Source: Macrostomum lignano (lineage: Eukaryota). Taken from it: a stretch of DNA of 64,000 bases. The notes under the pieces were generated by a model, which saw only the letters and a list, made by a program, of their open reading frames with translations, was not told the DNA's origin and made no database searches. Of the stretch, positions 1 through 44,510 are shown in pieces; position 1 is the stretch's first letter, and each line of letters begins with the position of its first letter. The stretch lies in the NCBI GenBank assembly GCA_002269645.1, contig NIVC01002757.1, positions 62,001 through 126,000 on the forward strand. Reading direction: 5' to 3'. Both the position numbers and the translations under genes were made by a program.

Positions 1-3000
1 AAGCGTTCTGTGTCCGTGCGCCAGTGCTACGTGAAAAACTGTCGCCGAAAACTGTACATCCAAAGTCGTTTGCAGTTGTGCTGCAAGCCGAAACCAAAGC
101 GGCATCGCTATTGTGAGAAAAAATCTGGGAAGTGGGTCACAAAGACATTGCACTACAAGTGAGTTAAATGCCTCCGTCTATGTACTTTTATTAGGACCAT
201 TTTGTTATTCACTCCTACGTTTATGGATAATATGAAACAAACGCTTTCCCTAATGTTGTTTCTCAGACTTGTTCCATCTGGTCCCTGCTGAAAGACCGAC
301 ATGGTCGAGTCCTAGCTAAGCAGCTGAAGGTGGTAGCCACAACTAAACGTCACTATCGAAAAGTACGCTGCCCTCGAAATAAAACTCGCGAAAATTGTCA
401 CCGACGTTCCGGCCGCTGGGAGAAAACCCAAATTACTTGGCGTCGCGTTGGCTGTCATTGCAAACGTCGAATCGTTCGTAAAAGGGGTCGATGCAGTGAG
501 TTCTTCTCTGAAAAAATCGTTAATTCGAATCACTTTTCTTAATTAAAATGCAAGCATTAAACTTAAATATTATTACTAAACCAAAACAGAGTGCCCACCA
601 AAGCGAGTCCGCTGGGGTCGGTGCCATAACAGACACAAGGTTCGCACCGTCATCAAATTTTTCCTGAGGAGTCAAAAATGTCACCGCGAAGTCAAGAAGC
701 GACTATTCCTGTGTGCTTGCCCCAAGCCTCGACGTTACACCGTGTGCGACGGCAAAGGTGCCTGGAAGAAGTGTCATGTGACGTATCGTCTTAAATTCCG
801 TCAACAGCGCTGCATCAAAAAGCGACACTGCCGAAGTCGCCTACAAACGTGCGAGGCGTCGTCTGAAACTCGTAGCAAGTGCAAGCATTGCCACCGAATA
901 ATTCGCACAGTCTCGTGGCGCTTGAACCGACGTAAGTGCTCGTGCACTCGAATAACTCGCAAGCGAAAGGTCGAATGCGATTGTCGGAAGCGGAATAGTC
1001 GGAAGACTGTTTGCAAGCACGGAGCGTTCGTCACGAGCATTGTCAAGTATCATCAAAAAGGCGAGAAGTGTGCCAAGGTTGTCCGAAAGATTACAAGAGC
1101 TGTCCGTAAGTTTAACCTTCTTTTTTCGGTAAAAAGCTACTCATATTAGCGATGCAAATTACTCCTAAATATAATGTATTTATCGTGCAACACTCAATCA
1201 GGCTGCAGTCGTCGCCACATCAAGCGAATTTTGAAGGGCACCTGTGTGAAAAAGGCTGGTCATAAGCGCCGCGGCTACCAGAAGCTGTTACGGCTGTGGC
1301 ACGAGCGTCGTGGTTGCAAATGCTACCGAAAACGAGTCTATTCCTGGGTGCCATGCGTCTGTCACCTGATTAAGAAATACCGAACAAAACGATCGGTTTA
1401 TTGCAGCCGGGGTCACGTGACTGTTCACAAGAAAGTTTATTACGTTCTAAAGAGGAAGAGCCACAGATGTGTAAAGCGTGTCCACAAACGAAGGACTCCA
1501 GTTGGTGAGATTTATGTTTAAGCTTATTTACTGGTTTTAAGCTAATCTGTAGGCAGCACAAAGCAAATCGAAATTCAGGATAGTTGGTTAGGTATCTATT
1601 TAGGTCTACAATCAGTGAATTTAGGTTAGTTATAGTTGTACTGATGCAATGTCTACTGATGCAATAACTTCCAGTATGCAAGGGCACCAGGACCCGACGC
1701 AGTCGTTGCAAGCCAAACGGCAAAGGCGACAAGTTTTCTGTCACACGAGTTCTGCGTCAGCGCAGCGATGGCAAATGCGGCTGTGCTTGGCGTTCGGAGA
1801 GCACGCGTAAAAATGTTTGCCACTGCCGTCCACCTCGCCGAATTAAGCGCTGCGTGCAGAATAAGACGCGTCAACAAATCCTTATCCGCTACCACCCAGT
1901 TCGCGGACGCAGTCACTGCAAAGGAAAGCGCCGTGTTTACAACAAGCATCTGTCCTGCCCGAGCAACTTCTCCCGACGAGACAAGTGTCATCGATGTACT
2001 TTTCAGTTAGAAAATACGCTTATCATCCGGAAAAGTGTCGCTGCGTAGCACGAAAGGTTGCCACAAAGCGACTCCGCTGCTGCTGTCCAAATCCTGTCAC
2101 AAAGCGTCACTGCGATGCCAAACGACATATGATTGTCACCGTCAGGAGCATCTACAAGCTGCGACACTATCGCTGTCATCGCCGACGCGTCACGCGCACT
2201 CGCCGAGTTCGTTGTGGACGAACGCGACCCCTATACCGCGTGTCTAAGTGCAGCAAGGACGGTTTCCGTAAAATTCGCAAAATGTGGCGTTACACGGTCG
2301 GTTGCTTGTGTCGCAAGCGCACGGTTGTCCGCAAGCAACGTTGCTCATGCCCGCACGCTCGCGTCTACAAGCCCGGAAAGTGTGGTCGCCGCTTTGCTCA
2401 CGACGTCTGGCTAGGTTACAAACTAAAAGACACTGGCGTGAAAATTCCCGGCACCAACAAACCAGTGTTAAAGTGCGTAAAAGTGGTTGTCGATAAACGA
2501 AAGCGCCGTTGCCGCTGTCCAAAGCCATACCGTCGGTCGATCTGCCGTAGAGACAACCTCATTCTCCGGATAACCGTTTCTTATCGCCTGCACGCTAATA
2601 GCTGTCAGCGAAAGCGAGTTGTTCGTAAGCGACGCTTGTCCTGTCGTCGTCGTCCCCACCTTGTTCGTCGGATAGTATCGCCAGAAAAGTGTTCAGCAAA
2701 GCATGGCTATTCCCAGAAACTAACATACATTTACGTGCATGCAAAGGGCTGCCATTGTAAAAAGACCCGACGAGTGAAGCATAGAATCTGCGACTGTTTC
2801 CGCAAGTACGGTGGCAAAAAGCATCATGTTAAATGTGTTAAGCACAACCGGCTGTTTAGGCGCAGCTTTTGGATGGCAAAGCGCGGTAAAGGCTGCGTAA
2901 AGCGAGTCAAAACTGTCGCCAAGACAATCCGTTGTGCCAAGAAGGTACGCATTCGTTCCGGTCCGTGTAAGCGCTCGAGCGGGAAGAAATCTTTCCGTTT

Positions 3001-6000
3001 CTATCATCTGGTTGCCCGTCACTGTCGCTGCGTTTGGCAGCTGGTGCGCCGCGCAAAAGCTGCTTGCCGATGTCCGCCATCGAAGCGCTCCACGCGTTGT
3101 CACAAGAATGCTAGCTGGGTGACAACCAAGTTCAAGTGGCGTCTAGTTGGAAGCGGGCCAAAAGCTCGCTGTGTCCTGCACAAGCGGAAAATAGTGCGCC
3201 ATATCAAGTGTCGGGTTGGTCGACGAGTTCGTCGCTCAAGCCGCTGCAATAACTCAGGCTACAAAGTCACCGAAGCCACTACTCGAAGACTAGTGAAATG
3301 CAAGTGCATGAAGCGCACTGAACGTCAAAAGTGCAGGTGCCGATGCCCAAAGAATCGTAAAGCGCGCGTATGTCGCGGCAGTGTGTGGGTGACGGAGCGC
3401 ATTACTCACAAGCTGGCCAAGTGCGCTTGCAGAACAACGCGTCAAGTGATTAGAGAGCCGGTTTCCTGTCCGAAGAAAACTCGAGTACAAGGCCCCTGTC
3501 GGCGTGGCAAAAACGGAGATTTCTACAAAAAAGTTGTGCGAACAAGTTGGAGGATTAGTGGGTAAGCTTTGCATTCACGGACTTTGTATTTTCATTGACA
3601 CTATGCGATGTACAAATACAAACTAGGCCTTTATAGAAAATTTGTGATCCATTTTTAAACAAATGACGTTCATTGATGATTTTCATTTTTAGCTGCAAAT
3701 GCAAACGCATCCGCAAAATCCGACACCGCCTCTGCGGCTGCGACGCCCAACAACTTAAGCGTCGCATTTGCGAATCTGGATTTGTTCGCGTCACAGTCGT
3801 CTGGAAGCGACTGTTAGTTAACAATGCATGCCGCCGAGTGCGAAAGTATCGGCGAAAAGAACGCCTTCACTGCGGCCGGGTTCAAGTGCGTCAGTGTGCG
3901 ACAGACGGAGCGGCAAATTGAGCGTGTTTGCTATTAGGCCCTACGCCAAGAGTTGCCGTTGTCATAAGCGTGTGGTTCGGCGCCTACGACGATGCGGTGA
4001 GCCGATGCTCAAATTATAGATAAATGGCACTTTCCCAATAAGAGCTCATTAGCAGTGCTTCGTCTTAGCTAGTTGTAGCCTACTAGTTGGAGCGTCGGGC
4101 TCACGACTTTGAGGTCGGGGGTTCGATTCTCGACCCATTAGGAACAATTTGTGTCCTTGAGCAAGACACCTAACTCTGCATTGCGTCAGTTCACCCAGCT
4201 GTAAAATGGGTGCCAGCATTAGCTGGGGTAATTGAGGATGGGTGTGGTGACCTCCCCCCCCCCAGTCCTTAGACTGAACAGCCGTACGCAGCCTTTAGAT
4301 GCGCCGTGTAATAGCTTCGGCTGAGCTGTCGGTTGCACATCTGCCCATTAGTGTAGGTGTAGTCAATTATTATTCATATTATTAGTGTTATGATATCAAG
4401 TAAATCAATGCATCTTTAATAATTTTAGGCTGCCACCAGCGCCGCAAGATGAAGGTTGGAAAGTGCAACCGTCATACGTGCCGGCAGCGGCTGTTGTATT
4501 TGCGTCGAGTATTCAACAAGGCGTCCGAAGAGTGCGTATGGCGACGTTATCAAAAGCAGCGGACCTGCTGCTGTAAGGGAGTGAAACGCCTGGAAAAGTG
4601 CAAGCACAAAGAGGGCCAACGAGTCGTCAAGGTTCTTAAACGTGTACTCAAACATTGGAGCTGCGTCACTGTGGCGACAGAAGTCCGTCATCAAATTAGT
4701 AAGTGAAATTAAAGCTTTGCTAGACAACTGTAATTTTATCTATAATTTCGCAACTATTCGTTCCAGAATGCAAGCGTCATTTGACTGTAATGAAAAAGCG
4801 TCAGAAGAACGGAGTCCTCAAGCTGGTCAAGTGTTGGACGGTGCGCAAAGGTTGCGGTTGCGGTAAAAGATGCAAAACAATGTTCCGACGCTACCGTAAG
4901 TACTGAATGTTTCGTTGTTTTCCTTTATATTCTAAAGATTGGAAGATTTGGCTCTATTGTGTCAAAGTAACAATTCATACCCACCCGACAGGCTGCAAGC
5001 GTCCATTGAAACGCAAAAGATGCATCTGCGTCAATGGCAAGTGTCGCACCCAGCTTATGTTAAAGCATTGGCGTCTGGCCCACGGCGGATGCTACGGCCA
5101 GATCCGGGTCCGCACTCGGCCCACCGTTTGTCCGCCAGTGCTATTCAGCCAAAGCAGATGCGCCGTGCCTACAAAGTACGGCTTCTACCGTGTTAAGCGC
5201 ACTGTTCACTGGCGCCAGAAGCGCTGCCGTTGTGTGCGCATCATCAAACGTCAATCTGTCGTGTGTCGCTGCTGGCGATCAAGCTCGAAAAAGCGCTGTC
5301 ATCGACGACGCGGATTGATTGAGCACATCCGAGTTCACTATCGAATCAACAAGGGCCGTTGCGTGAAATCGATCAAGCGAACGCAGCGTCGGGTGAAGTG
5401 CGGTCATAAAAACTGGCGCTATTCGCGACGAGTTGCCCACCCGAAGCGCAAGGATGTACACTTGAAGATCTACGTAAAACACGTCCGAATTGGTTGCAAT
5501 TGTAAAAAACAAATTAAGCGAGTGCCCTGCAGATCAAGGTTAGCTGCTTCTGCTAAAATTTCGAGGTCTGGGCTTCCATTAAAATATAATTAATTTTTTG
5601 TTTCTAATCTACTATTTATTTACCCCAGGTGCCGACCATGCATCAAAAAGCGTCGCTGCAGCTCCGCTGGTAGAGTACTCGTCAGTTCAAGAATTTGCTG
5701 GCACCTTTCTAATTGTCGATGCATCCGTCGAGTGGTCGTCAAACGACACCGTGTACGCTGTCCGCGTTCTCGACGTCGGACAATCTGTCATCGTAAAAAA
5801 AGTGTGCCGTTGCAATAGCCACTAAGCAATACCGTGTTCAAGGTTGCCGATGCGTAGCGAAAACCAAAGTGCATCGAACTGGCCTAAAGTGCTGCTGTCC
5901 TGGGCCAAGGAAAAGTCGCAAATGCGTCCGCGGTTCCATACGCCATCGAACTGTCCGTTACCAGTTGCGCGATGGTCGCTGCCACGCTATCGTTTCCAAT

Positions 6001-9000
6001 GCCTTCCGACCAGTACAATGTCCCAAAAAGCGTCGCCACGTTGTTCGCGGACGCTGCCGTAACGGTCGACAGGCCTACGTCCAGCACTTTTGGACTAAGC
6101 GCGGCTGTCGATGCGTTCGAGTAAAACGCTCCTATCACCGCCGATGCGGTTGTCGGTACAAGATAGTCGAGCTGGTTGTCGCTGTGGATCTTCATTCTCG
6201 GAGAAGGAAGGCAGTCCAAACTATCGATCGCACGTCTCCGATTTTCTTGAAGTAGTCCTGCGCCAATTCGAATCCGGCTCAGCGAAGGTTCGCACGGTGT
6301 TGTTCACATACAGCTCAACTGTGCGCAAGCATCACATCGAGTCCAGCGAGAATGATGCTTCTGCACTGTTCAACGATTTCACTAACAGTAAGACAAATCT
6401 TTTCGGCGCTCTGAAAGCTATTAAGGCTCACCTGGTTCGCAGCAGGCGTCAATATTCGAATAAAGTCAAGCGAATCGTGCTCGTAGTGACCAGAGGAAGG
6501 CATACAAAGAGCAGGCGCTCGATTTTACTCGCGGATAAGATCAAACACATGGCTCGATTGTTCGTCATCGGATTCGGTTCGCTGCCTAAATCAGGTCGCT
6601 ATGTTAAATGGTTGGCTAGCAGGCCAAGACGGGTGCATTATCTGAGGATGAAGAAGACACAAGAGTAAGTCTAGGCAATAACTCCTGACTATCCGGACAT
6701 ATAAGTAGTATAAACGCATATAAATTTCAAAAGTACCAAGCACAAAACATCTTGGTACTTAGTATTGTTCTTAATAAGACAAAGCATTCAGAGGCTGGTT
6801 AAGGTCAGGTAAGTTCCTGGACCAAGTTCCAGTGCTCGTAGTAGTAACGAACGATTAATTATTTACGATCCGCGCAGTCAGTAGTAAGTATAGTTAAGTA
6901 GCCAATAGTAAGCACCATTGATTTTTCAGATACAAGTTCATCGCTTCGCGAATCTTTGAGCACGCCTGTCGCAAGCATTGTCGACGACGGCCTAAACGTC
7001 ATATTGGCAAGTGCAAGCGCGACACGTGCCGTCGTCTGCTTACCGAAGTCACGTGGCATCGCGACAAGCGCAGCGGAAAGTGCGTCCGACGCCGCCGGAC
7101 AAAATCTCGCACCTGCTGCTGTAGAGGTCAAAATTCGAATCGCCTGGTGTGCAGAAACGGTCGCCGACTTCGAATCATTGTCCGATACAAGTTCGACGGG
7201 CGTCGAGGCGTCTGTCATAGGCGAGTTCATAAAATCGACACCTCAGCCTCGCTACACGCTCGCTGCCGTCCAGTCAAACTGCGACGTCGCGGCTCTTGCG
7301 ATGCTAAAGGCTGGCGTCGCGACGTTTTGGTACATCGCTACGTCACTAAGAAATCTTGTCGATGCCACACAAAACGGCGCCACCTACGCGCTGTTCGCTG
7401 CCGTTGTCCATCGACTAAACGTCAGCAAAAATGTCGACGCAATCGACGCGGTCATTGGTACCGCGTTACCTGCCGTATTGAGTACAAACTGCATCGTCGC
7501 GGTTGCAAAAAGCGGAGACATTGTTCAAAGCGTCGAGTCGTTTGTCGACACAAGAAAAGAGTTGTCCGGGTTCGAGGCCGGTGCCATCGACATAGCTGCC
7601 GTCGCCGAAACAGTGTAGTCACATACAGCGTTCATAAATGTCGCTGCAGGAAAAGAGTCAAGACTTTAACTCAAGTCTGCTGTAAGTATTCGTAAGAGTA
7701 TTTGCATGCGTGCTTAGAATACAAAAATGCGTCTTGCTCGTTGAAAATCAGCCACGTATGCAAAAGGCAGGCGCGGCGCATCCAAAGGCTGTGTACAGCT
7801 AGGTGCCCACAACTTCCGTCCAGAATTTCCACTACAGCCCAGGGCCAACGATCATATCAGAGTATGGTAAAGTGAAGCTCAACTTCATTTTTCTCCCTTC
7901 TTACTGTGGCTATTTTGAGGGGTGACACTATACGACGTAGCCTATTAGGTTGCGCACTAACCGCGAAAAACTCTGCTTAACTTGCCTCTCTAGCAGTGAA
8001 TTTAATAGCATTTGTAATGCTATTATGGCATTACAAAAGTCGCTCTATTAAAACATTTTCGAAACATTTTCAACAGGCTGCAAGCGAAAAAGTCGTAAGC
8101 ACAGTTTCTGCAACAAGCGCCGACACGCTATAGTTCGAGTTAAAACGCACTACCGCCTGGTTCACGGCGCTTGTCGCCCTGTCTCGCGCAAAACGGAGCA
8201 CCCCATCCAATGTCGCACCGATCGTCGTAAGCTACCGGGCCACTGCCGACGCCACAAAAACGGCTTTTATCGACGCGTAGTCACGCAGACCTGGCATCGA
8301 CGTGGCTGTCGTTGCATTCGACGAACGCGTAAAAGTGGTTTGCGCCTTTGCCGATGCTCGTCGAAGAGACGCAAAGTTCAGCGCTGTCTGTCGCGACGTG
8401 GAGTGATAGTTACCATCGAGAGTTGGCTGCATCCGCACGGCAACAGCTGTAAACGGCGCAGTCGCACTGTCGGCCGAGAGCGAGTCACCTGCAGCCATCG
8501 TCGCGTTCGAGTTAAGGGTCGCTGCGGTCGCGGCAAAGCGGCAAAGGCGGCCGCTGCTGCAGCGAAGGACGGTCGGAAATTCGCTATTGAAACTGTCACG
8601 TGGCAGCGCAGGGCTGGCTGCAAGTGCAGGTAAGTTGAAGCTTTTTTTAATCTTGATTTGTTTATCTTGTCTTTTTATCTTTCTGTTTATCTTTACCATC
8701 TTTTTGCAGACGGATCCGCCGCTCCCACGTCCGCCTCTGTGCATGTACAAAACGCGTTCGTCGAGTGACACGTTGCCATGCCAACCGCCAACTGTCGGTC
8801 ACGCTTTATCATCACCGTCTGGCGCATTCTCGCAATGGATCTGCGACATGCAAAATCGTACGAATAACTCGCCGCCACCGAGTCCGCTGCCGTCGACCAG
8901 TGATCCGCTTGGGACGAAAGTGTCACTCAGGCAAACGAACTGTCCTCGTTAAAGTCTTCACGCCGAAGAAATGTCGCTGCAAAGCTAAACTTTACCGACG

Positions 9001-10629
9001 TTTGATAGCCTGCAAAGCCGCCTGCACTGACAAGCTGCCTAGCAAGGTGTGCAAAAAGTGGGCCGCATCTCGTAAAATTAAGATTTGCCGTCGACACCCA
9101 CACTTGGCTGATCGGCTGTGCGCTGCAACATGTGGAAAATGTAAGCTTAAAGTAGTGGAGCTGTCGTCGATTTTCCTTTTTTATAACTAAGTTATGACTC
9201 TATTTAATTTTCCATCAAACAGGCTGCAGCAAATCGACAATCGTCCACGTAGGAGAGCACTGTCTGCTGGCTCAAAATCGTACACTGCTTGCCAGTCAAA
9301 ATGATACGAGTAGCAACCATAAACTTACCCTTGCAAAGCTGACCACGTTTGAGGCCTGCAGCCGTTCCTGCTTGGCTAATCCTCACTGCCGAGCCTTTGA
9401 CTATAAACGCAGCAGCGGCCACTGCCGCCTGCTCCGCATCAACCACCACAGCCTCGACCGCGACCTTCCGGAACTCAAGCCCACCCCGGGCTGCCTGCTG
9501 TTCGAAAAAGCTTGTCAACGAAAACCAAAAGGCTGCCCGCATCGACGCATTAAAAAGTCTTGGGCCTGCGTTTGTCGTCCATTCTTTGGCAAGGGTCGAC
9601 GTCCGCTGTGTTATCGACGCGCTCTCGTCGCTGTTTACTTCCGACGCAGCCGCCGCCGCTGTGTCCACAAACTTCGCCGAATTTTAATTCCTTGCCACGA
9701 TTGCGAGGACAAGAAGCGCTGGTGCCAGCAAGCCGCTCGGAAGGGCAAGTGCGCCAAGGATTCCCGGGTGAGAAAACTTTGTCCGCACAGCTGTCACAAG
9801 TGCGCCCGACATCGCACTCGGGCAGGACGCGCAGGTCATGGTCATCGGCTAATGCGCCGTCGCATTAGTGCCTGCTCCAAATCTGGCTGGCGTAAGATCG
9901 TTCGAGGTGGATTGTACTACGACAGGCGACTGAAGCTGTGGCGAGTTTATAAGGGAGTGAGTCACAAACGCTGCATTCGCTGCCCAATAGGTTCCAGACT
10001 GATTGTTGGACGCTGCACCAAGCACGGCAAACGGAAGCTGACCTGGATTGTGGTTACTAGACACAGTCGTCGGGGTCATCACAGTCGACCCTGTCGAATC
10101 AAAAAGAAACACCGCGTGGTGAGCTGTCGCGGCTGCGGCGGACTCGATCTAGTTCGAAAAGTTGGCCATTGCGTTCGCAAGCCGGGACACGGCTGGCACC
10201 GTGTGGTGACGAGTACATTCACGGAGCGCGACAGTCGTAAGCATCGCTGCATTGTGCGCCACCATAAGAACACATTCGCGTGCTCGCCGAAGTGTCCCAA
10301 GCGTAGCGTTAGCCAGTCTCGGTGCAAGTGCGGCCGTCGCGTTGTTTGCACTCGGTATTATGTCACCTACCCCGGTCGGCGCCGCTGCGTGGCTAAGAAG
10401 ATCACCCGAAGCGAGAAATGCGTCAGTGCCGCCTCTGGTAAGAACCGTCCTTGACGTCAAATTACTTTTTACAAGCATGAACAAATCCACTATAGTGATC
10501 TACAATTTCTAACTCTTTTTAGATTGCAACGATCAAATCAAGGCGCACGATTGTCAAGCAATCAAGCACTCGGGAATGTGCTCTACGCTGCACCGTCTAT
10601 GCGCGAAAACTTGCGGTCGCTGCAAGTAG
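1..10629 (+). CDS. 3' part of a giant Arg/Lys/Cys-rich repeat protein with vWA, 3x ShKT and PAN/apple domains (5' end outside window; five 1-nt frameshifts as assembled)
   Basis: Exons read by hand with GT-AG boundaries and matching phases: <1-158, 267-495, 590-1105, 1202-1504, 1675-3561, 3693-3996, 4429-4698, 4767-4895, 4992-5538, 5629-6664, 6930-7681, 8077-8629, 8710-9140, 9223-10437, 10523-10629 (TAG). Exon sum 8437 nt plus 5 missing bases = 8442 nt = 2814 codons. The same R/K/C/H-rich motif style runs through all exons. AATAAA at 10742-10747. Confidence 0.85.
4072..4385 (+). mobile_element. tRNA-derived SINE in an intron of the giant gene
   Basis: A-box-like TAGCCTACTAGTTGG, B-box GGTTCGATTC, central TCCTTGAGCAAGACAC..CAGTTCACCCAGCTGTAAAATGGG resembling conserved SINE core domains, TTA-rich tail; second copy at 48998-49207. 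Confidence 0.7.
6154..6965 (+). other. von Willebrand factor A (vWA) domain within the giant protein
   Basis: CRYKIVELVVAVD-[S]SFS (DxSxS MIDAS-like once one T is restored at 6189/6190), then DFLEVVLRQF..VRTVLFTYSS..TNLFGALKAI..KRIVLVVTRG..ARLFVIGFG..; spans intron 6665-6929. Confidence 0.75.
9019..10626 (+). other. Three ShKT domains and one PAN/apple domain in the C-terminal part of the giant protein
   Basis: ShKT-type six-Cys patterns: ACTDKLPSKVCKKWAA..ICRRHPHLADRLCAATCGKC (about 9019-9224), DCEDKKRWCQQAARKGKC..RKLCPHSCHKC (about 9700-9805), DCNDQIKAHDCQAIKHSGMCSTLHRLCAKTCGRCK* (10523-10629). PAN-like TFEACSRSCLANPHCRAFDYKRSSGHCRLL (about 9225-9520). Confidence 0.75.
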
Positions 10630-11409
10630 CATTTGCGCTCCGAAACTGAAAACTTTATTCAAAGCACTCAAAGCACTCTGGTCAAGAAAACTGATTACAT
10701 TTGTTGTGGTGGTTGAACTGAAGCGAGTGACGCTACTCAAAAATAAAACCATTTAGCTGACGAAATTATATTTATCATTTGAAGCTCAACTGACTTTGCG
10801 TGCCTTATTTAGGGTAATTAAGCTCTCAATTATAATTAAGTTAGGCTGTGTTAAGTTAGACTTGAAAAAAAGGTAAAGTTGCATGCTAAATGGACTAATT
10901 TGACCCCAAAAATGCACTCAGTTTGTCGTGATTAAGCCATTTCGAGCCCGCGAAATCTGTCACAAAGTCAGTCAGGCTTGTCTCTAAAATGAGACACTAG
11001 ATTATAGAAAGGGAGACGAGGTTGCTCAAAGCTAAGGAAGGTCCTTCGAAGCGGTCGCATTCACTTCTTCCTTAGTTAACGGGTTGGGCAGGTAATTGAG
11101 TTAAACGAAAAAAGAAGGTAGGTAGAAAAGAAATAAGAGGTTGGATGGTCTGAAGCTGAGAGACGTCAGTCACTTCCTTCTATAAAGGCGTCTGCCCGGA
11201 TTCAAACCAGCCTGCCTAACCTCATATTTCCGTGCGCTTAACCCTTCTCAGTTCCTCGTCATAAGGAAGCTTTTATATCCTTCGTGCCTGGAGTTCTCTT
11301 TCTCCGTCTCTCATTAGCAGCGAATTTTGTAAAGCTGCAACTGACCATGGAATGGGTGACAAGTAGATCTTCTCGCCTTAGTAATTCTACTTATCCTGAC
11401 TGTGGTGCT

Positions 11410-12319: not shown

Positions 12320-13610
12320 TGTCTGCCTGTCTATCTGTCTGCCTGCCTGTTTTAGTGTCAGTCTATCTTCGTTCTGCCTGTCTGTCTTAGTGTCTGTCTG
12401 TCTGTCTATCTATCTTAGTGTCTGTCTGTCTTAGTGTCTGTCCGTCTGTCTGTCCGTCTGTCTGTCTATCTGTCTGCCTGCCTGTTTTAGTGTCAGTCTA
12501 TCTTCGTTCTGCCTGTCTGTCTTAGTGTCTGTGTCTTAGTGTCTGTCTGTCTGTCTATCTATCTTAGTGTCTGTCTGTCTTAGTGTCTGTCCGTCTGTCT
12601 GTCCGTCTGTCCGTCTGTCTGTCTATCTGTCTGCCTGCCTGTTTTAGTGTCAGTCTATCTTCGTTCTGCCTGTCTGTCTTAGTGTCTGTCTGTCTGTCTA
12701 TCTATCTTAGTGTCTGTCTGTCTTAGTGTCTGTCCGTCTGTCTGTCCGTCTGTCCGTCTGTCTGTCTGCCTGTCTATCTGTCTGCCTGCCTGTTTTAGTG
12801 TCAGTCTATCTTCGTTTCCGCCTGTCTATCTTAGTGTCTGTGTCTTAGTGTCTGTCTGTTTTAGTGTCTGTCTGTCTTAGTGTCTGTCTGCCTGTCTATC
12901 TGTCTGCCTGCCTGTTATAGTGTCCGTCTATCTTCGTTTCTGCCTGTCTATCTTAGTGTCTGTGTCTTAGTGTCTGTCTGTCTCAGTGTCTGTCTGCCTG
13001 TCTATCTGTCTGCCTGCCTGTTATAGTGTCAGTCTATCTTCGTTTCTGCCTGTCTATCTTAGTGTCTGTGTCTTAGTGTCTGTCTATCTTAGTGTCTGTC
13101 TGTCTGTCTGCCTGTCTATCTGTCTACATGCCTGTTATAGTGTCAGTCTATCTTCGTTTCTGCCTGTCTATCTATAGTGTCTGTGTATTAGTGTCTGTCT
13201 GTCTGTCTGCCTGTCTATCTGTTTGCCTGCCTGTTTTAGTGTCATTCTATTTTCGTTTCTGCCTGTCTATCTTAGTGTCTGTCTATCTTAGTGTCTCTCT
13301 TAGTGTCTGTCTGTCTATCTTAGTGTCTGTCTGTCTGTCTGCCTGTCTATCTGTCTGCATGCCTGTTATAGTGTCAGGCTATCTTCGTTTCTGCCTGTCT
13401 ATCTTAGTGTCTCTCTTAGTGTCTGTCTGTCTATCTTAGTGTCTGTCTGTCTGTCTGCCTGTCTATCTGTCTGCCTGCCTGTTATAGTGTCCGTCTATCT
13501 TCGTTTCTGCCTGTCTATCTTAGTCTCTGTGTCTTAGTGTCTGTCTGTCTTAGTGTCTGTCTGTCTGTCTGTCTGCCTTCCTGCCTGTTTTAGTGTCTGT
13601 CTGTCTTTCT
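12320..13610. repeat. Compound microsatellite (TCTG/TCTA/TTAGTG blocks in longer recurring units)
   Basis: Direct inspection: tgtctgtctatctgtctgcctgcctgttttagtgtcagtctatcttcgtt recurs throughout. Confidence 0.95.
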
Positions 13611-14689: not shown

Positions 14690-16760
14690 TATTGAAACGC
14701 ACCGAAAGAGGGATTAACAGTTCATTAAAACACACCGGAAGAGGGATTAGCAGTTCATTTAAACACACCGGAAGAAGGATTAACAGTTCATTTAAACACA
14801 CCGGAAGAAGGATTAGCAGTTCATTTAAACACACCGGAAGAGAGATTAGCAGTTCATTTAAACACACCGGAAGAAGGATTAGCAGTTCATTTAAACACAC
14901 CGGAAGAAAAAGGATGAACAATTCATTTAAACACACCGGAAGAAAAAGGATGAACAATTCATTTAAACACACCGGAAGAAGAATTAACAGTTTATTTAAA
15001 CACACCGGAAGAAGGATTAGCAGTTCATTTAAACACACCGGAAGAAGGATTAACAGTTTATTTATCACACCGGAAGAAGGATTAACAGTTCATTTAAACA
15101 CACCGGAAGAAGGATTAACAGTTTATTTAAACACACCGGAAGAAGGATTAGCAGTTCATTTAAACACACCGGAAGAAAAAGGATGAACAATTCATTTAAA
15201 CACACCGGAAGAAAAAGGATGAACAATTCATTTAAACACACCGGAAGAGAGATTAGCAGTTCATTTAAACACACCGGAAGAAAAAGGATGAACAATTCAT
15301 TTAAACACACCGGAAGAAGGATTAGCAGTTCATTTAAACACAACGGAAGAAGGATTAACAGTTTATTTAAAAACACCGGAAGAAGGATTAACAGTTTATT
15401 TAAACACACCGGAAGAAGGATTAACAGTTTATTTAAAAACACCGGAAGAAGGATTAACAGTTTATTTAAACACACCGGAAGAAGGATTAGCAGTTCATTT
15501 AAACACACCGGAAGAAAAAGGATGAACAATTCATTTAAACACACCGGAAGAAAAATGATGAACAATTCATTTAAACACACCGGAAGAAGGATTAGCAGTT
15601 CATTTAAACACACCGGAAGAAAAAGGATGAACAATTCATTTAAACACACCGGAAGAAGGATTAGCAGTTCATTTAAACACACCGGAAGAAAAAGGATGAA
15701 CAATTCATTTAAACACACCGGAAGAAGGATTAGCAGTTCATTTAAACACACCGGAAGAAAAAGGATGAACAATTCATTTAAACACACCGGAAGAAGGATT
15801 AGCAGTTCATTTAAACACACCAGAAGAAGGATAAACAGTTCATTTAAACACACCGGAAGAAGGATTAGCAGTTCATTTAAACACACCGGAAGAAAAAGGA
15901 TGAACAATTCATTTAAACACACCGGAAGAAAAAGGATGAACAATTCATTTAAACACACCGGAAGAAGGATTAGCAGTTCATTTAAACACACCAGAAGAAG
16001 GATAAACAGTTCATTTAAACACACCGGAAGAAGGATTAGCAGTTCATTTAAACACACCGGAAGAAAAAGGATGAACAATTCATTTAAACACACCGGAAGA
16101 AGGATTAGCAGTTCATTTAAACACACCGGAAGAAGGATAAACAGTTCATTTAAACACACCGGAAGAAGGATAAACAGTTCATTTAAACACACCGGAAGAG
16201 AGATTAGCAGTTTATTTAAACACACTAGAAGAAGGATTAACAGTTCATTTAAACACACCGGAAGAGGAATTAACAGTTCATTTAAACACACCGGAAGAGA
16301 GATTAGCAGTTCATTTAAACACACTAGAAGAAGGATTAACAGTTCATTTAAACACACCGGAAGAAGGATAAACAGTTCATTTAAACACACCGGAAGAAGG
16401 ATTAGCAGTTCATTTAAACACACCGGAAGAAGGATTAACAGTTCATTTAAACACACCGGAAGAAGGATTAACAGTTCATTTAAACACACCGGAAGAAGGA
16501 TTAACAATTCATTTAAACACACCGGAAGAGAGATTAACAGTTCATTTAAACACACCGAAAGAAAAAGGATTAACAGTTCATTTAAACACACCGGAAGAAG
16601 GAATAACAGTTCATTTAAACACACCGGAAGAGGGATTAACAGTTCATTTAAACACACCGAAGAAGGATTAACAATTCATTTAAACACACCGAAAGAAAAA
16701 GGATTAACAGTTCATTTAAACACACCGGAAGAAGGATTAACAGTTCCAAATATAAGAAGG
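14690..16760. repeat. Minisatellite of 33-bp and 36-bp units (about 60 copies)
   Basis: Unit TTCATTTAAACACACCGGAAGAAGGATTAGCAG (33) and variant with AGAAAAAGGATGAACAA (36); accounts for ORFs 15183-16835 (+) and 15065-16657 (-). Confidence 0.95.
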
Positions 16761-19016: not shown

Positions 19017-27060
<8,044 letters not shown>

Positions 27061-28320
27061 GACCACTGCGTCTCTGTGCGAGGTCTAATGACTTTATAGA
27101 GTGAGTGAAAGTGTCCGGAAGGAACCACTAAACCGGCTGCACGGATACTACGACAAAGGATGCGGCTTAACTTATCAGTAATAGATTTCTAGTCCTAAGA
27201 GCTCTCACCCCCTGCTCTGATCCGAATTGGCTGGCCGCAGAGCCGAAATCCCCCAGCCACTCAGCAATCATTAGTAATTGGGGGATAATTCCTGCCGTCT
27301 CCACCCCGCGTCCCCCTTCCAGTTTCCCTGCCGGGCCACACTCAGCAAATCAGCTTTGCAGAAAGAGAATGGCTGGTTACTATGGACGACAACAACGAAT
27401 GAATGGTAAAAAAGAGACTGGAAGAGTGAATAGAGATGCGTAGAGGCAGACGCAGGGGGAGGTACTTGGCTTAGTGGAAGGACAAACCAGCTGAAGTGCC
27501 CGGGTGGCCTGCAGGTCTGACTCTCGCCCACACGCCCCAGCAGTAAGATTCTAAGCTTCTTTTGTGTCCGCGAACTGCAGCAGCTGTCTCCAGCGGCTGG
27601 GAGCAGCAGCAGTCGCTATTGTCACGGGTCGGGCCTGCAGCTGTGGAAAAAAGCATGCAGTCATACACAGCATTACATGTTTATCTGTCAGTCTTGCAGC
27701 TTTCGCCCCGCAGCGGTACCGCTATCTATTCGGCTATGGATGCCACGCAAGGATGAACCCTTAGGCAGGGAATATCTCGATGAAAAAGTTGAGGCCCTCA
27801 TGGAATCCTTGTAGAAAAGATCTTTACTATCTATAGTTTACTTTTTTCGATTCATTCACATTGAGTCTTGAAAGGCTTTGTCAATTTTTTTGGCTTTGCG
27901 GGCTTTGTCTTCAAACATTGCTGGCTCCCATGGCAAAGAAATAACAAATAGACGACTACTTCGTTAATTCAGTATCGGAAATGTCTATTGAAATGTTCAA
28001 CAACAGCATCGGCAGGGAGTAAGAGAGCATTTAAAATAATCTATTTTTAAAATCACTCTTCAATTTGCGTTCAATTTTTCATTAAACAGAAAGCTCAATT
28101 AAGAGACCAATTTAAGTTTCGCTGGTCAGAAACAACCTTGCAAGCTCGTAAAAAAGTAGTCGATAAGTTGCTGCTCAACAAAATGACAGCATTAGGTTAG
28201 TAGTATATTTAGATTCAAATTTGTCGCTTAATTCAAATCTATAGGCGGAAGGCGTCTTGCATTGTCTAATGGAATAAAAACCTTTAAAATGCCATTACAT
28301 TACAGCTGTGGAGCTATGTG

Positions 28321-33041: not shown

Positions 33042-36000
33042 ATGAGTCATACACCCGCAGCCTCTCGCAATTCTAATTTCAAAACCCTCCATTTTTCAGG
33101 CTTTATTGCGCGTCTTGGCGGGGCAAAGGCCCTGCCAAAATTTAAGGCAAAAGGGGTCGAATACGAGATAGTATTCACAAATTTGAGCGATATTCGCTCA
33201 ACATTTGAGAAAATAATAGCAACCCTCTGCGCCGACCTGAATGCAGATGACTTCGTCGCATCTAAGCTGACGGCGGACAATATGATGCTCGCCATCAATG
33301 TCCCGCCCGTCCGCCGCAGCCGCTTCACTGCAGAGCTTGTCTTCAAGCATATCAACAAGGTGCTGCAGTCGGACTCCAGCGTCTTGGGCAACAACTTTAA
33401 ATTGTTTTTGCTCAAGGCCTGGGTCCCGCGGGGCGGCTGCGGCAGCTTAGATGCGGCGGAGCGCCACATTCAGGCCAGGCATGCTATGGGCTATAATTAT
33501 GTCATCATCGCCAACAGCGACAAGCGCTGTCTAATTCGAGCGCTGCTTGTCGCCAAGGCCTTTGCCGACCTGCAGGCCAAAGTCATCACGAGAACTACGT
33601 GGCAAACAATCAAGGCCGACTCCCCAATGCAGAAGAAGATTACTGGAGAATTACAAATTACCGCCAAATTGTATTCGGTGAGTAAAAATGTTCTTGCGCA
33701 TTTTAATTTGCATTTTTATTAATATACAAATGTTTTAGTCTTTATCAACCATCACACAGGCCGGGCCTTTCGGGGTTGACGTGCTCCCCCAACTGCTCGC
33801 CGCCATGAACGCTCAGTCGCCCGGCCGAGATTTCGGCGTCCGGGTGTACAGTGCCGAGGAGGGCAATACGTGCGTGTACGCCCTACCCGGCCGCGAAGTG
33901 CTGAATCTGCACCTAATTGGCGAACACTTTAACGCGGTGTGCAAGGTGCCGCCATTTTTCGGAGCCCGCCGCTATTGTGACCGCTGCCAGCAGCCGTATG
34001 ATTGCAACTCTGGAGAGCACAAGTGCGCCAACACCTGCCCTCAATGCAAAGCGCCTGGCTCCAATTGCAAGAGCCTGCGGTGTGACTATAAGCGCTGCGC
34101 TGATTGTGGCCTCAAGTGCTACAATCAGCAGTGCTTCGACAACCACCTTCGCAAGAACCGGGCTGGCCGGTCGCGCTGCAGCTCAACCCGTGTCTGCCCC
34201 AATTGCGGGTATTGCGAAGACCTGAAAGCCGGTCAAAAGGAGCCAGAGCACAAGTGCGGCCACATCAAATGCCCACTGTGTAAACAGTATGATGAGGCCG
34301 GCTCGCATTTGTGCTTCGTCAAGGCTCCTAAAGTGAAAGCATCGACTATGCCGTACGTGTTCTACGATACGGAAACATACACGGACGAGGAGAAGCAGCA
34401 TCACGTGCATCTGGTGACTGCCGTCACGTGCTGCGAGACCTGCTCCGGCCGGGCGTTTCCGCGCGAGACTTGCCGCCTCTGCAATGGCCTGCATAGCGCC
34501 GCCAATTGTCTGACTGGCCGCGATCTGGGGGAGGAATTCTCCAATTGCGTCAGCCACTCAGACTGCGCCTGCCAAATGGCCGATTTTGTGGCTGTGGGCC
34601 CGGCCTCGCTGAATGCTTTTTTCACCTGGCTGAGCACCACATTCCGCGGCGGCGTCATTGTTGTCGCGCATAATGCATCAGGCTATGATGCGTTTCTACT
34701 GCTTGGCGCTCTGCTCAACGGCCTGGCCAAGAAGCGGCCCCAAGTACTGTTCCAGGGCAGCCGGCTAATGAGCATGACGGTTGACAAATTGGTATTCAAA
34801 GATTCGTTAAATTTTATACCAATCCCGCTTGCGCAATTCCCCAAAGCGCTGGGGCTCGCTGACACAAAGCTGGCCAAGGGGACGTTTCCCCACGAGTTCA
34901 ACAAGCCGGCTAATTGGAACTACGTGGGCCCCTACCCGGCTATTGAATATTATGGCGGCAAAGCAAACAAGGACTATGACTCAATCTGTGCTTGGCTAGC
35001 CTCGCGACAGGGCGAGTTGTTCAACTTTAATCGGGAGTATCTCGATTATTGTTTGAGCGACACAGTCCTGCTTCGCGAGGGCTGCATCAAGTACAGGGCA
35101 ATAATTGGTGAAATTTGTGACGGCCTGGAACCATTTGTACAGGCCAATACGATTGCCAGTTTGGCAATGGCCGTTTTCACCACCCGATTTATGGAGCCCA
35201 ACTCGCTCGGCGTGATTGCCCGGCAGGCCGACCAGCAGTCATTCAAGGCGCGCAAGTGGCTGGCCTATTTGAATGCCACCGAATTTGGCGGGCGGCTGCG
35301 AACCTGCGACTCTACTGGCGGCGAGGCTGTCATTCTCGGCCGCAAGGTGGACGGCTTCGATGAGGCGAGCAACACTGTCTTGCAGTTTCATGGCTGTTTC
35401 TACCATGGCTGCGAGCAGTGCATGCCTGATCAGGATGCTGTCCACCCGCTCAAACGGCAGCCTCTGAGCCATATCCGCCACGAGACTGAGTGGTTCACTC
35501 GCGAGTTGGAGCGGCAAAACTACAGTGTTCGTACAATTTGGGAGCACGAATACGACACTGTATTGGCATCGCAGGCTGATTTCATTGCCGCAACTGCACA
35601 TCTGCGCGCTCCACTCAAGATGGAAGATGCTCTCTACGGCGGCCGCGTAGAATGTTTTATCCCGCATGCTGTGGCCAGCGAGACTGAGACTCTCAAATAT
35701 CGGGATGTGGTGAGTAGTGATACTACTAATATAGTAGAATATTTTGCAAAAATACAGTTTATGAAAATAATGTTTTATTTCAACTTGCAGGTCTCTCTGT
35801 ACCCGACGGTGCAGTCGAAAGACCCGTACCCGATTGGCCACCCGGTGCAACATCCGACGCCGCAAGTGCTAGATTCTGACGCGCTGGCTAGTTACTTTGG
35901 TATTGCCAAAGTGACTGTGTTGCCGCCGTCAAATTTGCACATTCCGCTGCTGCCCTACAGGGTGCAAAAGAAGCTCTTTTTTGGGCTTTGCCGCACCTGT

Positions 36001-37169
36001 ATGGAGCAGCAGTGCGGCGACGATTGTGACCACTCAGACGAGCAGCGGGCACTGACTGGTACCTGGGCAACGCCGGAGCTGCAAAAGGCCTTCCAGTTGG
36101 GCTACCGGCTGCAGGTGGTGCACGCGCTAGCCTACTGGACAGAGAAGCGGACCGGTCTGTTCAGTGACTATGTCAGCACCTTCCTCAAATTGAAGGCTGA
36201 GTCGAGCGGCTCCCCCGGCATGTCGGATGAAGACAAGGCCGCCTATATTGCCGATTTCTTTGCAAAGGAGGGCGTCACGCTGGACAAGGTCGAGCCCAAC
36301 CCCGGACTTCGCTTTGTAGCGAAAATCTTTTTGAATTCGTAAGTAATTATAAATTCTGTTTTTTAAACGATTTTCTTCTACTAATAGTAGCACTTCTTTT
36401 CACAACACACAGGCTCTGGGGCAAATTTTGTCAGCGTGACGACCTGACATCGACAGAAATAGTATCCAGCTACGAGGACTGGCTCGCCTGGCTGACCGAC
36501 CCCAACCTCAAAGTCAAGGCCTGCGAACCGATTGGCAGCGAGTTTATGCTGCTAGAGTACCGGCACCGCTACTTTAATCAGCGGCCCTTCCGGTACTCCA
36601 ATGTGCCAATCGGTGTCTTTACGACCACGCAGGCCCGGCTGCGCCTGTACGAGGCATTGGAGGGGCTCGGCGAACGGGCCATTTACTGCGACACTGACTC
36701 GTAAGTAATGCATTGATAAATTATTTTAGAATTGAATAGTTGGCATGTGGAACTAATTATCTCTCTCCCCACACCCAGGGTCGTTTACCGGCATTCCGAG
36801 GGCCAATGGGAGCCGCCCCATGGCACGAGCCTCGGAATGTGGACCGACGAGGTGCCCGCAGGCAGCCGGATGACCGACTTTGTAAGTGGAGGGCCCAAGC
36901 TCTACACTTACATTGTCGAGGATGCGGCCGGAGTCCAGAGCCAAGTCCTGAAATGCAAGGGCATCCGCCTGACTCCGGAGATTCGGGAACGCAGCGACGA
37001 ATTGCGCAGTGCCCTACTACACGGCGGCTCCCTGAAACTGCCGCAGTTTCAGTTCAGGCGCGACAAGGCGTCTTGCACCATACACACTGTTAGTATGGAC
37101 AAGACGTTTCAGCGCGTCCTGACGAAACGCGTGTACGGGACCTGCAGCAGGCCTTATGGCTATAAATAA
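33042..37169 (+). CDS. polB: Protein-primed family B DNA polymerase (pPolB), intron-containing, about 1270-1295 aa depending on first exon
   Basis: Exons (33042 or 33100)-33677, 33760-35709, 35791-36338, 36413-36700, 36779-37169; introns of 82, 81, 74 and 78 nt, all GTRAGT..CAG. Spliced product has ExoI YVFYDTET, ExoII AHNASGYD, ExoIII YCLSDT, LYGGRVE, YRDVVSLYP, KIFLNSLWGKF, YCDTDSV, LGMWTDE, SGGPKLY, KCKGI. No stops or frameshifts. Confidence 0.95.
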
Positions 37170-44065: not shown

Positions 44066-44510
44066 TGTCGTCGAACTTGACAACCGTTCTATAGCTTTGA
44101 GATGTCGTATCATGCAAATTTTCTCTTTAATTTTTTTGCTGTTTTTCACGCTATTAAAGATAATTGGGAATCAGCGTGACTGACAAGCATTTTTTATTTG
44201 CAGATGCCAGCTGTGACAATTCCCAAGCCATTATCAAACTGAAAGCTCTTATGTGTTTCTGGCTTCTGAATTTTAATCAAAAGAAAAAGAGAAGAGAAGA
44301 GATGTCTTCAACAAGAGGCATGCTATTTGAATTCTCATGAATTGGCGTGAATTAAGCCAGCTGACAGGCTGTTTCGAAGCATATGCATATTGATGAAGCT
44401 TTTCTTTATCCATTCAAATATAATTTACCTTAGGAAATGCTTTCGTTCGTTCAAATTAAAAGCTAGATACAGTATAATGGTTTTACTTAGGAAATGTACA
44501 TTGTTTAGCG

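What the first reader, a model, noticed from the sequence alone, without database searches (positions are those of the whole stretch)
1..10629. Giant polycationic, disulfide-rich repeat protein of unknown family
Seen: at least ~2800 aa dominated by Arg, Lys, Cys, His and Val with very few acidic residues, built from alternating ~40-45 aa modules: one of type CP..G.C......R.....W.....C.C........C.C, the other CP.P....C......V.....Y.L....C.........C. Copies are highly diverged in sequence but keep Cys spacing and charge, which points to folded modules under selection rather than a satellite. Inference: a secreted structural, adhesive, mucus/gland-granule or antimicrobial precursor. I do not recognise the repeat as a named domain.
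Basis: partly seen in the sequence, partly recalled or inferred. Interest (0 to 1): 0.75.

Follow-up and report, generated by a model that had tools for sequence, protein, structure and literature searches.

The report
Giant polycationic flatworm repeat-protein gene
The first 10.6 kb of the window is the 3' part of a multi-exon flatworm gene for a very large, secreted-type, extremely positively charged protein built from about 45-residue disulfide-locked beta-hairpin modules; the modules match no named domain but define an undescribed family of giant proteins seen so far only in flatworms, and this copy has at least four reading-frame breaks.

Summary
Positions 1-10629 (+) hold about 15 exons of a gene that runs off the window's 5' edge and ends at a stop codon at 10627-10629. 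My spliced model has 2,769 aa: R 19%, K 12%, C 9%, V 9%, H 6%, D+E 3%, net charge about +776, pI 11.5.

Cysteine spacing is periodic. An ~89-aa, 8-Cys unit made of two ~45-aa modules recurs at least 19 times, with no DNA-level repeats. A VWA, a PAN/Apple and three ShK-like domains are embedded.

The repeat hits nothing in Pfam or the PDB, by sequence or by fold. A profile of it finds 81 proteins, up to 5,275 aa. Every one that carries an organism name is a flatworm (Macrostomum, Echinococcus, trematodes, monogeneans). The closest, a polycationic Macrostomum lignano protein, is collinear with it. AlphaFold2 predicts all-beta hairpin modules with confidence (pLDDT 86-89).

The most likely reading is a secreted, rod-like polycation that binds polyanionic glycans. 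This function is inferred, not shown.

Caveat: at least four frameshifts interrupt modules, so this copy is either a recent pseudogene or carries assembly indels.

The parts
1..10629 (+). 3' part of the gene (coding region; the 5' end lies outside the window)
   Evidence: Composition scan, splice-aware model, collinear BLASTP to flatworm homologues reaching their C-termini
1..135 (+). Exon cut by the window edge; its 3' end is uncertain (135 or 155)
   Evidence: The strong sites GTGAGT at 156 and CAG at 266 are frame-incompatible, so there may be a fifth frame problem within 136-317
267..495 (+). Exon (repeat unit)
   Evidence: GTGAGT donor at 496 and CAG acceptors; unit HMM hit at 318-497
590..1105 (+). 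Exon (about 2 units)
1202..1504 (+). Exon
1675..3561 (+). Largest exon (about 6 units); contains the frame break at 1994-2015
   Evidence: The 59-nt 'intron' in my first model has a poor donor (GTCCTG), and removing it deletes half a module
1994..2015 (+). Frame break 1 (frame 3 to frame 2) inside a unit
   Evidence: Unit-HMM positions 1-65 in frame 3 end at 2015 and positions 60-89 in frame 2 start at 1994; sequence view
3693..3996 (+). Exon; contains the frame break at 3879-3897
3879..3897 (+). Frame break 2 (frame 1 to frame 3), at a GTGTG run
   Evidence: HMM 1-56 in frame 1 ends at 3897 and HMM 50-88 in frame 3 starts at 3879
4429..4698 (+). Exon
4767..4895 (+). Exon. It is followed either by a 42-nt intron (GTAAGT...AAG) or, if there is no splicing, by an in-frame TGA at 4904-4906
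4938..5538 (+). Exon (2 units)
5629..6664 (+). Exon with units and the VWA domain; contains frame breaks 3 and 4
5797..5806 (+). Frame break 3 (frame 2 to frame 1) at an A7 run
   Evidence: HMM 2-59 in frame 2 ends at 5797 and HMM 61-84 in frame 1 starts at 5806
6210..6222 (+). Frame break 4 (frame 1 to frame 3) inside the VWA domain
   Evidence: tblastn of the M. lignano homologue P0060: residue 181 ends at 6210 in frame 1 and residue 183 starts at 6222 in frame 3
6150..6664 (+). VWA domain
   Evidence: Pfam PF00092, E 2.5e-9, 38 bits against a 23.8-bit cut-off; 37 % identity to the VWA of P0060
6930..7681 (+). Exon (about 3 units)
8077..8629 (+). Exon (2 units)
8710..9140 (+). Exon (last regular unit plus ShK-like domain 1)
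9017..9139 (+). ShK-like domain 1
   Evidence: Pfam ShK 15.5 bits (cut-off 20.9), with the six-Cys pattern
9223..10437 (+). Exon: PAN/Apple, ShK-like 2 and a C-terminal cationic Cys-rich region with altered spacing
9306..9515 (+). PAN/Apple domain
   Evidence: Pfam PAN_1, E 9e-10, 38.7 bits against a 21.4-bit cut-off; 47 % identity to P0060
9699..9797 (+). ShK-like domain 2
   Evidence: Pfam ShK 16.4 bits
10523..10629 (+). Last exon: ShK-like domain 3 and the stop codon (10627-10629)
   Evidence: Splice sites GTAAGA at 10438 and TTTTTAG at 10522; Pfam ShK 20.5 bits; homologues also end in a ShK domain
10742..10747 (+). AATAAA, a candidate polyadenylation signal
   Evidence: Sequence view

Best explanation
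This is the 3' two-thirds or more of a flatworm gene, from a species related to but distinct from Macrostomum lignano. It belongs to an undescribed family of giant extracellular proteins found so far only in Platyhelminthes.

The protein is a chain of about 45-residue, disulfide-stapled three-stranded beta-hairpin modules. These come in two alternating variants, which together make an 8-Cys unit of about 89 residues. The chain is interrupted by a VWA domain and ends in ShK - PAN/Apple - ShK - Cys-rich region - ShK.

Shown: the module, its periodicity, its family, the collinear architecture, a confident predicted all-beta fold, and the extreme, uniform positive charge (about +28 per unit).

Inferred: the protein is secreted as a stiff, rod-like polycation. 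It binds and cross-links or condenses polyanions, such as sulfated or acidic glycans of mucus, gland granules or matrix, by multivalent electrostatics. The VWA, PAN and ShK domains would supply specific protein or carbohydrate contacts. On this reading it is the folded-module counterpart of the cohesive Lys/Arg-rich regions of the flatworm adhesive protein Mlig-ap1.

In this assembly the copy is interrupted by at least four frameshifts. It is therefore either a very recently inactivated copy or an intact gene with assembly indels.
For: Gene structure, composition and charge. Periodicity beyond chance.

Family: the profile search gave 81 proteins at E<=1e-3 and 19 at E<=1e-30, with up to 45 units per protein. 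All 21 clusters that carry an organism name are flatworms. Alignments are collinear over 1,700-3,100 aa and reach the homologues' C-termini; the closest homologue, M. lignano A0A1I8FT25 (P0060), is also polycationic. The neighbouring OTUD7-like gene has its best hit in M. lignano (56 % identity, E 1e-82, against 1e-53 for the next hit).

Fold: AlphaFold2 pLDDT 89.3 for one unit and 85.7 for two units, all beta, with high confidence across the unit junction.

Disulfides: Cys columns are 86-100 % conserved in 426 units, and paired Cys losses occur far above expectation (C2/C4: 8 against 0.5 expected; C6/C1': 6 against 0.2).

Secretion: extracellular domain types, signal-peptide-like N-termini in long homologues, and no transmembrane-like stretch. 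One paralogue fuses the units to a mucin-type VWD domain.

Functional analogy: Mlig-ap1 is a giant flatworm protein with KR regions of reported pI above 14. In that study heparin-type polyanions blocked flatworm attachment, and the authors' model has them binding the KR repeats (PMC6410801).

Constraint: this copy keeps 95.7 % of the canonical Cys, against a family mean of 95.6 %.
Against: There is no expression, localisation or binding data for any family member, and no paper mentions them. Most family members are far less cationic: median net charge density is 0.11 per residue against 0.28 here. High charge is therefore a lineage or paralogue feature, not a property of the module. The N-terminus, and so any signal peptide, is not in the window. 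At least four frame breaks mean this locus as assembled cannot make the full protein. The exon model has no transcript support.
Confidence: 0.5

Rival explanations
1. The locus is a recently inactivated copy (pseudogene) of a functional paralogue or allele elsewhere in the genome. The frameshifts are real, and no full-length protein is made from this copy.
For: Four frame switches fall inside otherwise continuous modules, with no room for introns. There may be a fifth problem at the exon 1/2 junction and an in-frame TGA at 4904-4906 if the 42-nt intron is not real. Only one break is at a long homopolymer (A7); one is at a GTGTG slip site. Other long ORFs in the window (1.6, 1.6 and 2.6 kb) and 1.3 kb of the OTUD7-like gene show no breaks. 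M. lignano carries several near-identical copies of family genes, as seen in the names Mlig008915g3/g4/g5 and Mlig022069g1-g3.
Against: Cys conservation in this copy equals the family mean. No clear nonsense codons lie within exons. Charge is uniform across all units. Any inactivation must therefore be very recent, and assembly indel errors explain the same pattern. The comparison with other ORFs is biased, because they were picked for being long.
Confidence: 0.4
2. It is a structural matrix or basement-membrane component that anchors to heparan-sulfate-type glycans, rather than a gland, mucus or adhesive secretion.
For: Orthologue-like proteins occur in cestodes, trematodes and monogeneans. 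From my own knowledge, these groups lack the free-living worms' rhabdites and duo-gland organs. VWA and PAN domains are common in matrix proteins.
Against: Paralogues are fused to mucin-type VWD modules. The extreme charge occurs in the macrostomid lineage rather than in the parasites. There are no tissue data either way.
Confidence: 0.25
3. It is a polyprotein precursor that is cut at its many dibasic sites into cationic, Cys-rich antimicrobial or toxin-like peptides.
For: There are 266 dibasic positions and very high charge. ShK-like domains are present.
Against: Dibasic sites are scattered through the predicted strands rather than placed at module borders. AlphaFold2 confidence is highest across the unit junction. 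The C-x-C pairs straddle the borders between units, and one inferred disulfide (C6-C1') reaches into the C-x-C pair that begins the next unit. Family members with ordinary charge keep the same architecture.
Confidence: 0.07
4. It is a composition or chance artefact, or non-coding sequence.
For: None beyond the broken frame.
Against: Profile hits reach E 1e-155 in independent genomes. Pfam VWA and PAN score above their cut-offs. Splice sites are canonical. Cys periodicity exceeds all shuffles at lags 2, 13 and 45.
Confidence: 0.01

Closest known systems
Unannotated giant flatworm proteins: Macrostomum lignano A0A1I8FT25 ('Apple domain-containing'), A0A1I8GF89 / PAA50356 ('VWFA domain-containing'), Echinococcus granulosus W6UV63 (labelled 'Collagen alpha-3(VI) chain'), Paragonimus, Echinostoma, Sparganum and Cichlidogyrus homologues
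   Same: They share the 8-Cys two-module unit (profile E down to 1e-155). They share the order repeats - VWA - repeats - ShK/PAN - Cys-rich region - C-terminal ShK, and alignments reach their C-termini. A0A1I8FT25 is also polycationic.
   Different: Identity is only 21-34 % overall. Most homologues are far less basic (K+R 15-21 %, D+E 8-13 %). None has a described function. 'Collagen' is a misnomer: there are no Gly-X-Y runs.
Mlig-ap1, the cohesive protein of the M. lignano temporary adhesive (Wunderer et al. 2019, PMC6410801)
   Same: Both are giant flatworm proteins; Mlig-ap1 is secreted by adhesive gland cells. Mlig-ap1 has more than 3,600 aa of extremely basic Lys/Arg-rich sequence. In that study anionic sugars blocked attachment and cations blocked release. 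It is the best functional analogy for a giant flatworm polycation.
   Different: Its basic regions are low-complexity Gly/Arg/Lys repeats, not Cys-framed folded modules (PMC8621496). Its core is C-lectin - VWD - C8 - TIL - EGF, none of which appears here. Its antibody peptide is absent from all family members fetched. It is an analogue, not a relative.
Gel-forming mucin / von Willebrand-type polymers (VWD-C8-TIL, CTCK)
   Same: One family member, M. lignano PAA78532 (P0087), joins about 18 of these units to a VWD domain (Pfam E 1e-26) and two ShK-like motifs read by eye in its sequence. Another member of its cluster is labelled CTCK. The units therefore sit where mucins carry their central repeats.
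   Different: The part of the gene in the window has no VWD or CTCK. The repeats are disulfide-rich and have few N-glycosylation sequons (7 NxS/T in 2,769 aa), rather than Pro/Thr/Ser glycosylated repeats.
Small disulfide-stapled beta-hairpin modules of matrix proteins (fibronectin type I, VWC, thrombospondin type 1)
   Same: The general design is similar: 40-60 residues, two or three long antiparallel strands, a C-x-C motif, a conserved aromatic residue, and frequent phase-1 introns at module borders. This resemblance comes from my own knowledge, not from a test.
   Different: No Pfam hit to any of them even at E<=10. No Foldseek match in the PDB (best E 0.17-0.37, TM 0.24-0.32, to unrelated beta barrels).

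Membership tests
Unnamed flatworm 8-Cys two-module repeat proteins | Unit C-x-C-x8-C-x~20-C-x12-C-x~10-C-x~19-C-x-C-x~10, repeated many times | tested here: met
   Cys gaps; 19 full units; the same 10 Cys columns are 86-100 % conserved in 426 units from the window and 88 proteins
Unnamed flatworm 8-Cys two-module repeat proteins | Significant sequence similarity to other members | tested here: met
   Profile search gave 81 hits at E<=1e-3, best 1.6e-155; BLASTP E 4e-95 to P0002 and 7e-89 to P0060
Unnamed flatworm 8-Cys two-module repeat proteins | Collinear architecture: repeats - VWA - repeats - ShK/PAN - C-terminal ShK | tested here: met
Unnamed flatworm 8-Cys two-module repeat proteins | N-terminal signal peptide | not testable with these tools
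   The 5' end of the gene is outside the window. The long homologues P0001, P0005, P0007, P0013 and P0028 have one by inspection
Unnamed flatworm 8-Cys two-module repeat proteins | Intact reading frame | tested here: not met
   Frame switches at 1994-2015, 3879-3897, 5797-5806 and 6210-6222. Whether these are mutations or assembly errors cannot be decided here
VWA domain (Pfam PF00092) | Profile score above the gathering cut-off | tested here: met
   38.0 bits against 23.8, E 2.5e-9
VWA domain (Pfam PF00092) | MIDAS metal site (D-x-S-x-S) | tested here: inconclusive
   The frame break lies at this position. The closest homologue has DLYGK there, so the motif may not be conserved in this group
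PAN/Apple domain (Pfam PF00024) | Profile score above the gathering cut-off | tested here: met
   38.7 bits against 21.4, E 9e-10
ShK domain (Pfam PF01549) | Six-Cys pattern and profile score above the cut-off | tested here: inconclusive
   Three separate segments each have ShK as best hit, at 15.5, 16.4 and 20.5 bits against a 20.9-bit cut-off. The six-Cys pattern is present by eye, and homologues are labelled ShKT
Mlig-ap1-type flatworm adhesive protein | Core of C-type lectin - VWD - C8 - TIL - EGF, with low-complexity Gly/Arg/Lys regions | tested here: not met
   None of these domains appears in the exons scanned. The basic sequence is Cys-framed modules with no DNA-level repeats, whereas Mlig-ap1 has GRK low complexity
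Collagen VI alpha-3 (the name given to the Echinococcus homologue) | Gly-X-Y triple-helical region | tested here: not met
   No run of four or more G-x-x repeats in the window protein, P0001 or P0082
Fibronectin type I / VWC / TSP1 modules | Profile or fold match | tested here: not met
   No Pfam hit at E<=10; no PDB sequence hit; no Foldseek hit at E<=0.001

The most novel reading that the evidence does not exclude
The ~45-residue module is a new fold restricted to flatworms. It builds stiff, disulfide-locked rods. In the macrostomid lineage these rods have been charged up to about +0.28 per residue to serve as the polycation partner of anionic glycans in secretions such as mucus, rhabdite-like granules or adhesive. 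That would be a folded-protein route to the polyelectrolyte chemistry that other animals achieve with disordered Lys/Arg-rich sequences. Less basic orthologues are retained in all the major parasitic flatworm groups.
Probability: 0.35. Interest if true: 0.7.

Novelty: new variant of a known kind. Interest (0 to 1): 0.55.

Why it matters
If the reading is right, several things follow.

- It names and delimits a protein module that the Pfam copy searched here does not contain and that no paper in the searched library describes. The module makes up some of the largest predicted proteins of flatworms, including Echinococcus, Paragonimus, schistosome relatives and monogeneans.
- It corrects a misleading database name ('collagen alpha-3(VI)').
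- It gives bioadhesion and biomaterials research a second, structurally ordered kind of giant polycation to set beside Mlig-ap1.
- It offers a phylum-restricted extracellular protein family whose role in parasites can be tested.

For this particular locus the value is limited by the unresolved question of whether the copy is intact.

Tried and rejected
- **Word-indexed homology search.** The 514-aa exon gave no hit. A 45-unit alignment also gave no hit. The index misses this family; the exhaustive profile search was needed.
- **Known-domain and RNA checks.** Pfam on repeat exons and on four homologues found nothing for the repeat. PDB sequence search gave only a chance hit at E 0.6. Foldseek against the PDB with one-unit and two-unit models gave only beta-barrel noise. 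Rfam and tRNA scans found nothing.
- **Exact-protein look-up** of a neighbouring ORF, to name the source assembly, found no record.
- **My first gene model** used very short 'introns' at 1952-2010, 3894-3952 and 5802-5842, and skipped the VWA and PAN domains. I rejected these. The donors are poor, removing them deletes half-modules, and the family HMM runs straight through them in a shifted frame.
- **My early idea** that a one-base change at about 6189 would restore a D-S-S-F-S MIDAS motif. I rejected it because the orthologue alignment puts the break at 6210-6222 and the orthologue has no MIDAS motif.
- **Mlig-ap1 as a relative.** Rejected: its basic regions are low-complexity GRK repeats, and its antibody peptide is absent from the family.
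- **Collagen identity.** Rejected.
- **Literature searches** by accession and by keyword found nothing on the family.

Full report
**What is in the sequence**

The window is eukaryotic. It has short GT..AG introns, no tRNA or Rfam hit and many satellites. Stop-free stretches rich in Lys/Arg/His and Cys, and poor in Asp/Glu, occur only on the + strand between 1 and 10451. They switch frames at canonical splice sites: GTAAGT or GTGAGT donors and pyrimidine-rich CAG or TAG acceptors, with introns mostly 68-432 nt.

I built a gene model from a composition-scored splice search plus manual inspection. It has about 15 exons and runs off the 5' edge of the window. The model has no transcript support.

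The conceptual protein has 2,769 residues: R 19.2, K 12.1, C 9.2, V 8.9, H 5.6 and D+E 3.3 %. K+R minus D+E is +776. It is about 330 kDa, has pI 11.5, and has no transmembrane-like stretch.

**The repeat**

Gaps between successive cysteines repeat as C-x-C-x8-C-x~20-C-x12-C-x~10-C-x~19-C-x-C-x~10. Cys autocorrelation peaks at lags 2, 13, 45 and 90 (z = 7.5, 10.8, 6.1, 3.6). The highest z in 500 shuffles is 4.6, so the first three lags exceed it and lag 90 does not.

A self-derived HMM finds 19 complete units, plus partial units. There is no DNA-level direct or tandem repeat. Units are 19-33 % identical, yet their Cys columns are invariant or nearly so. Each unit carries +24 to +36 net charge. 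Most of the well-supported introns are phase 1 and sit just before a module-initial Cys.

A profile-profile comparison aligns the two half-units over their full length (P 3e-5, probability 46 %). This suggests one ancestral module of about 44 residues.

**Embedded known domains**

- A VWA domain at about 6150-6664 (38 bits against a 23.8-bit cut-off).
- A PAN/Apple domain at 9306-9515 (38.7 bits against 21.4).
- Three ShK-like six-Cys segments at 9017-9139, 9699-9797 and 10525-10626. Each has ShK as its best Pfam hit but scores just under the cut-off.

**Is the module known?**

Pfam gives nothing for the repeat, either in the window or in four long homologues. A profile search of PDB sequences gives only a chance hit.

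AlphaFold2 was run with only the window's own units as the alignment. It gives confident all-beta models: pLDDT 89.3 for one unit and 85.7 for two units. Each module is a short strand followed by a 12-14-residue hairpin, and confidence is highest across the unit junction. Foldseek finds no PDB structure at E<=0.001 for either model.

**Relatives**

The word-indexed protein search failed twice. The exhaustive profile search of 1.84 billion representatives found 81 proteins at E<=1e-3, 52 at E<=1e-10 and 19 at E<=1e-30. They reach 5,275 aa, with up to 45 matched units per protein.

I looked up 30 clusters. All 21 that carry an organism name are Platyhelminthes: Macrostomum lignano, Echinococcus granulosus, Sparganum, Echinostoma, Paragonimus, Dicrocoelium, Trichobilharzia, Heterobilharzia, Cichlidogyrus and Protopolystoma. 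They are labelled hypothetical, 'VWFA/ShKT/Apple domain-containing' or, wrongly, 'collagen alpha-3(VI)'.

The window protein aligns collinearly with the C-terminal 1,700-3,100 residues of the M. lignano and Echinococcus proteins, right to their C-terminal ShK. The closest relative is M. lignano A0A1I8FT25: 34 % identity overall, with VWA 37 %, PAN 47 % and the C-terminal region 40 %. It is itself polycationic.

The neighbouring OTUD7-like gene also has M. lignano as by far its best hit, at 56 % identity. The source is therefore a flatworm related to, but not the same as, M. lignano.

Across 426 full units from the family, the ten Cys columns are 86-100 % conserved. Paired losses point to C2-C4 and C6-C1' disulfides. 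Long members begin with signal-peptide-like sequences. One paralogue joins about 18 units to a mucin-type VWD domain.

Charge varies widely in the family. Median net charge density is 0.11 per residue. The window protein, at 0.28, is among the three most basic.

**The frame problem**

I searched the family HMM against stop-to-stop pieces of all three forward frames. Single units continue across frame switches with overlapping or abutting genome coordinates at three places: 1994-2015, 3879-3897 and 5797-5806 (an A7 run). tblastn with the M. lignano homologue shows a fourth switch inside the VWA domain, between 6210 and 6222, with consecutive homologue residues on either side.

Two further points are ambiguous. 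The best splice sites at the first junction are frame-incompatible. A 42-nt 'intron' at 4896-4937 hides an in-frame TGA.

This copy retains canonical cysteines as well as the family average, 95.7 % against 95.6 %. The breaks are therefore either very recent mutations or assembly indels. Other long ORFs in the window and 1.3 kb of the OTUD7-like gene are unbroken, which leans slightly towards real mutations. That comparison is biased, and I cannot decide between the two.

**Mechanism**

Shown: a very long chain of disulfide-stapled beta-hairpin modules with uniform, extreme positive charge, carrying extracellular interaction domains, in a family whose complete members look secreted.

Inferred: the protein is a stiff secreted polycation that binds, condenses or cross-links polyanionic glycans. 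The only characterised analogue is Mlig-ap1, the cohesive protein of the M. lignano adhesive. Its Lys/Arg-rich regions have a reported pI above 14; heparin-type sugars blocked flatworm attachment, and cations blocked release (PMC6410801). Those regions are low-complexity Gly/Arg/Lys repeats (PMC8621496), so this is an analogy, not homology.

The rivals are a matrix role, a cleaved peptide precursor, and a dead copy. I found no paper on the family.

**Verdict**

The feature is real and was correctly observed. It is a member of an undescribed family of giant modular proteins seen so far only in flatworms, and it is unusually cationic within that family. Function is inferred, and the integrity of this copy is unresolved.

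Noticed in passing
window 14691-16746: A 33-bp satellite of about 61 copies at 89 % identity. It reads as long artefactual ORFs of up to 550 aa on both strands, so the ORF list is misleading here.
   Followed up: partly
window 12320-13610, 20984-22732, 23203-24088, 25520-25747: Large simple and short-period arrays: (TGTC)n, a 16-mer with 110 copies, (TTAG)n and (ATAG)n. They explain the extreme AT and GC skews in the composition profile.
   Followed up: partly
window 33781-36342 (+), with flanking ORFs 33042-33722 and 36732-37169: An 853-aa ORF with a protein-primed type-B DNA polymerase domain (Pfam DNA_pol_B_2, E 1e-27). This is probably part of a Polinton/Maverick-like or similar mobile element. 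The flanking ORFs have no Pfam hit.
   Followed up: partly
window 49398-54011 (-): An OTUD7-like deubiquitinase gene: an OTU exon at 51168-51965, an A20 zinc finger at 49398-49808 and an upstream exon at 53838-54011. The satellite arrays at 49939-50888 (24-mer) and 52022-53789 (44-mer, 40 copies) lie between its aligned coding blocks. The best homologue is M. lignano Mlig005475, at 56 % identity.
   Followed up: yes
window 26665-27066 (-): An ORF with a C3HC4 RING finger. It looks TRAF-like by eye, but only the RING was tested.
   Followed up: partly
window 45589-47232 (-), 40557-42194 (+), 43007-44149 (-): Three long ORFs (547, 545 and 380 aa) with no Pfam hit. The 547-aa product is not on record in the exact-match collection.
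   Followed up: partly
P0087 (M. lignano PAA78532, Mlig022069g3): A paralogue with a signal peptide, about 18 of the new units, a VWD domain (Pfam) with Cys-rich sequence after it, and two ShK-like motifs read by eye. The new module here takes the place of a mucin's central repeats.
   Followed up: partly
P0001 (E. granulosus W6UV63 / XP_024353468): The database name 'Collagen alpha-3(VI) chain' appears to be a misnomer. The protein has 45 matches to the new unit and no Gly-X-Y runs.
   Followed up: yes
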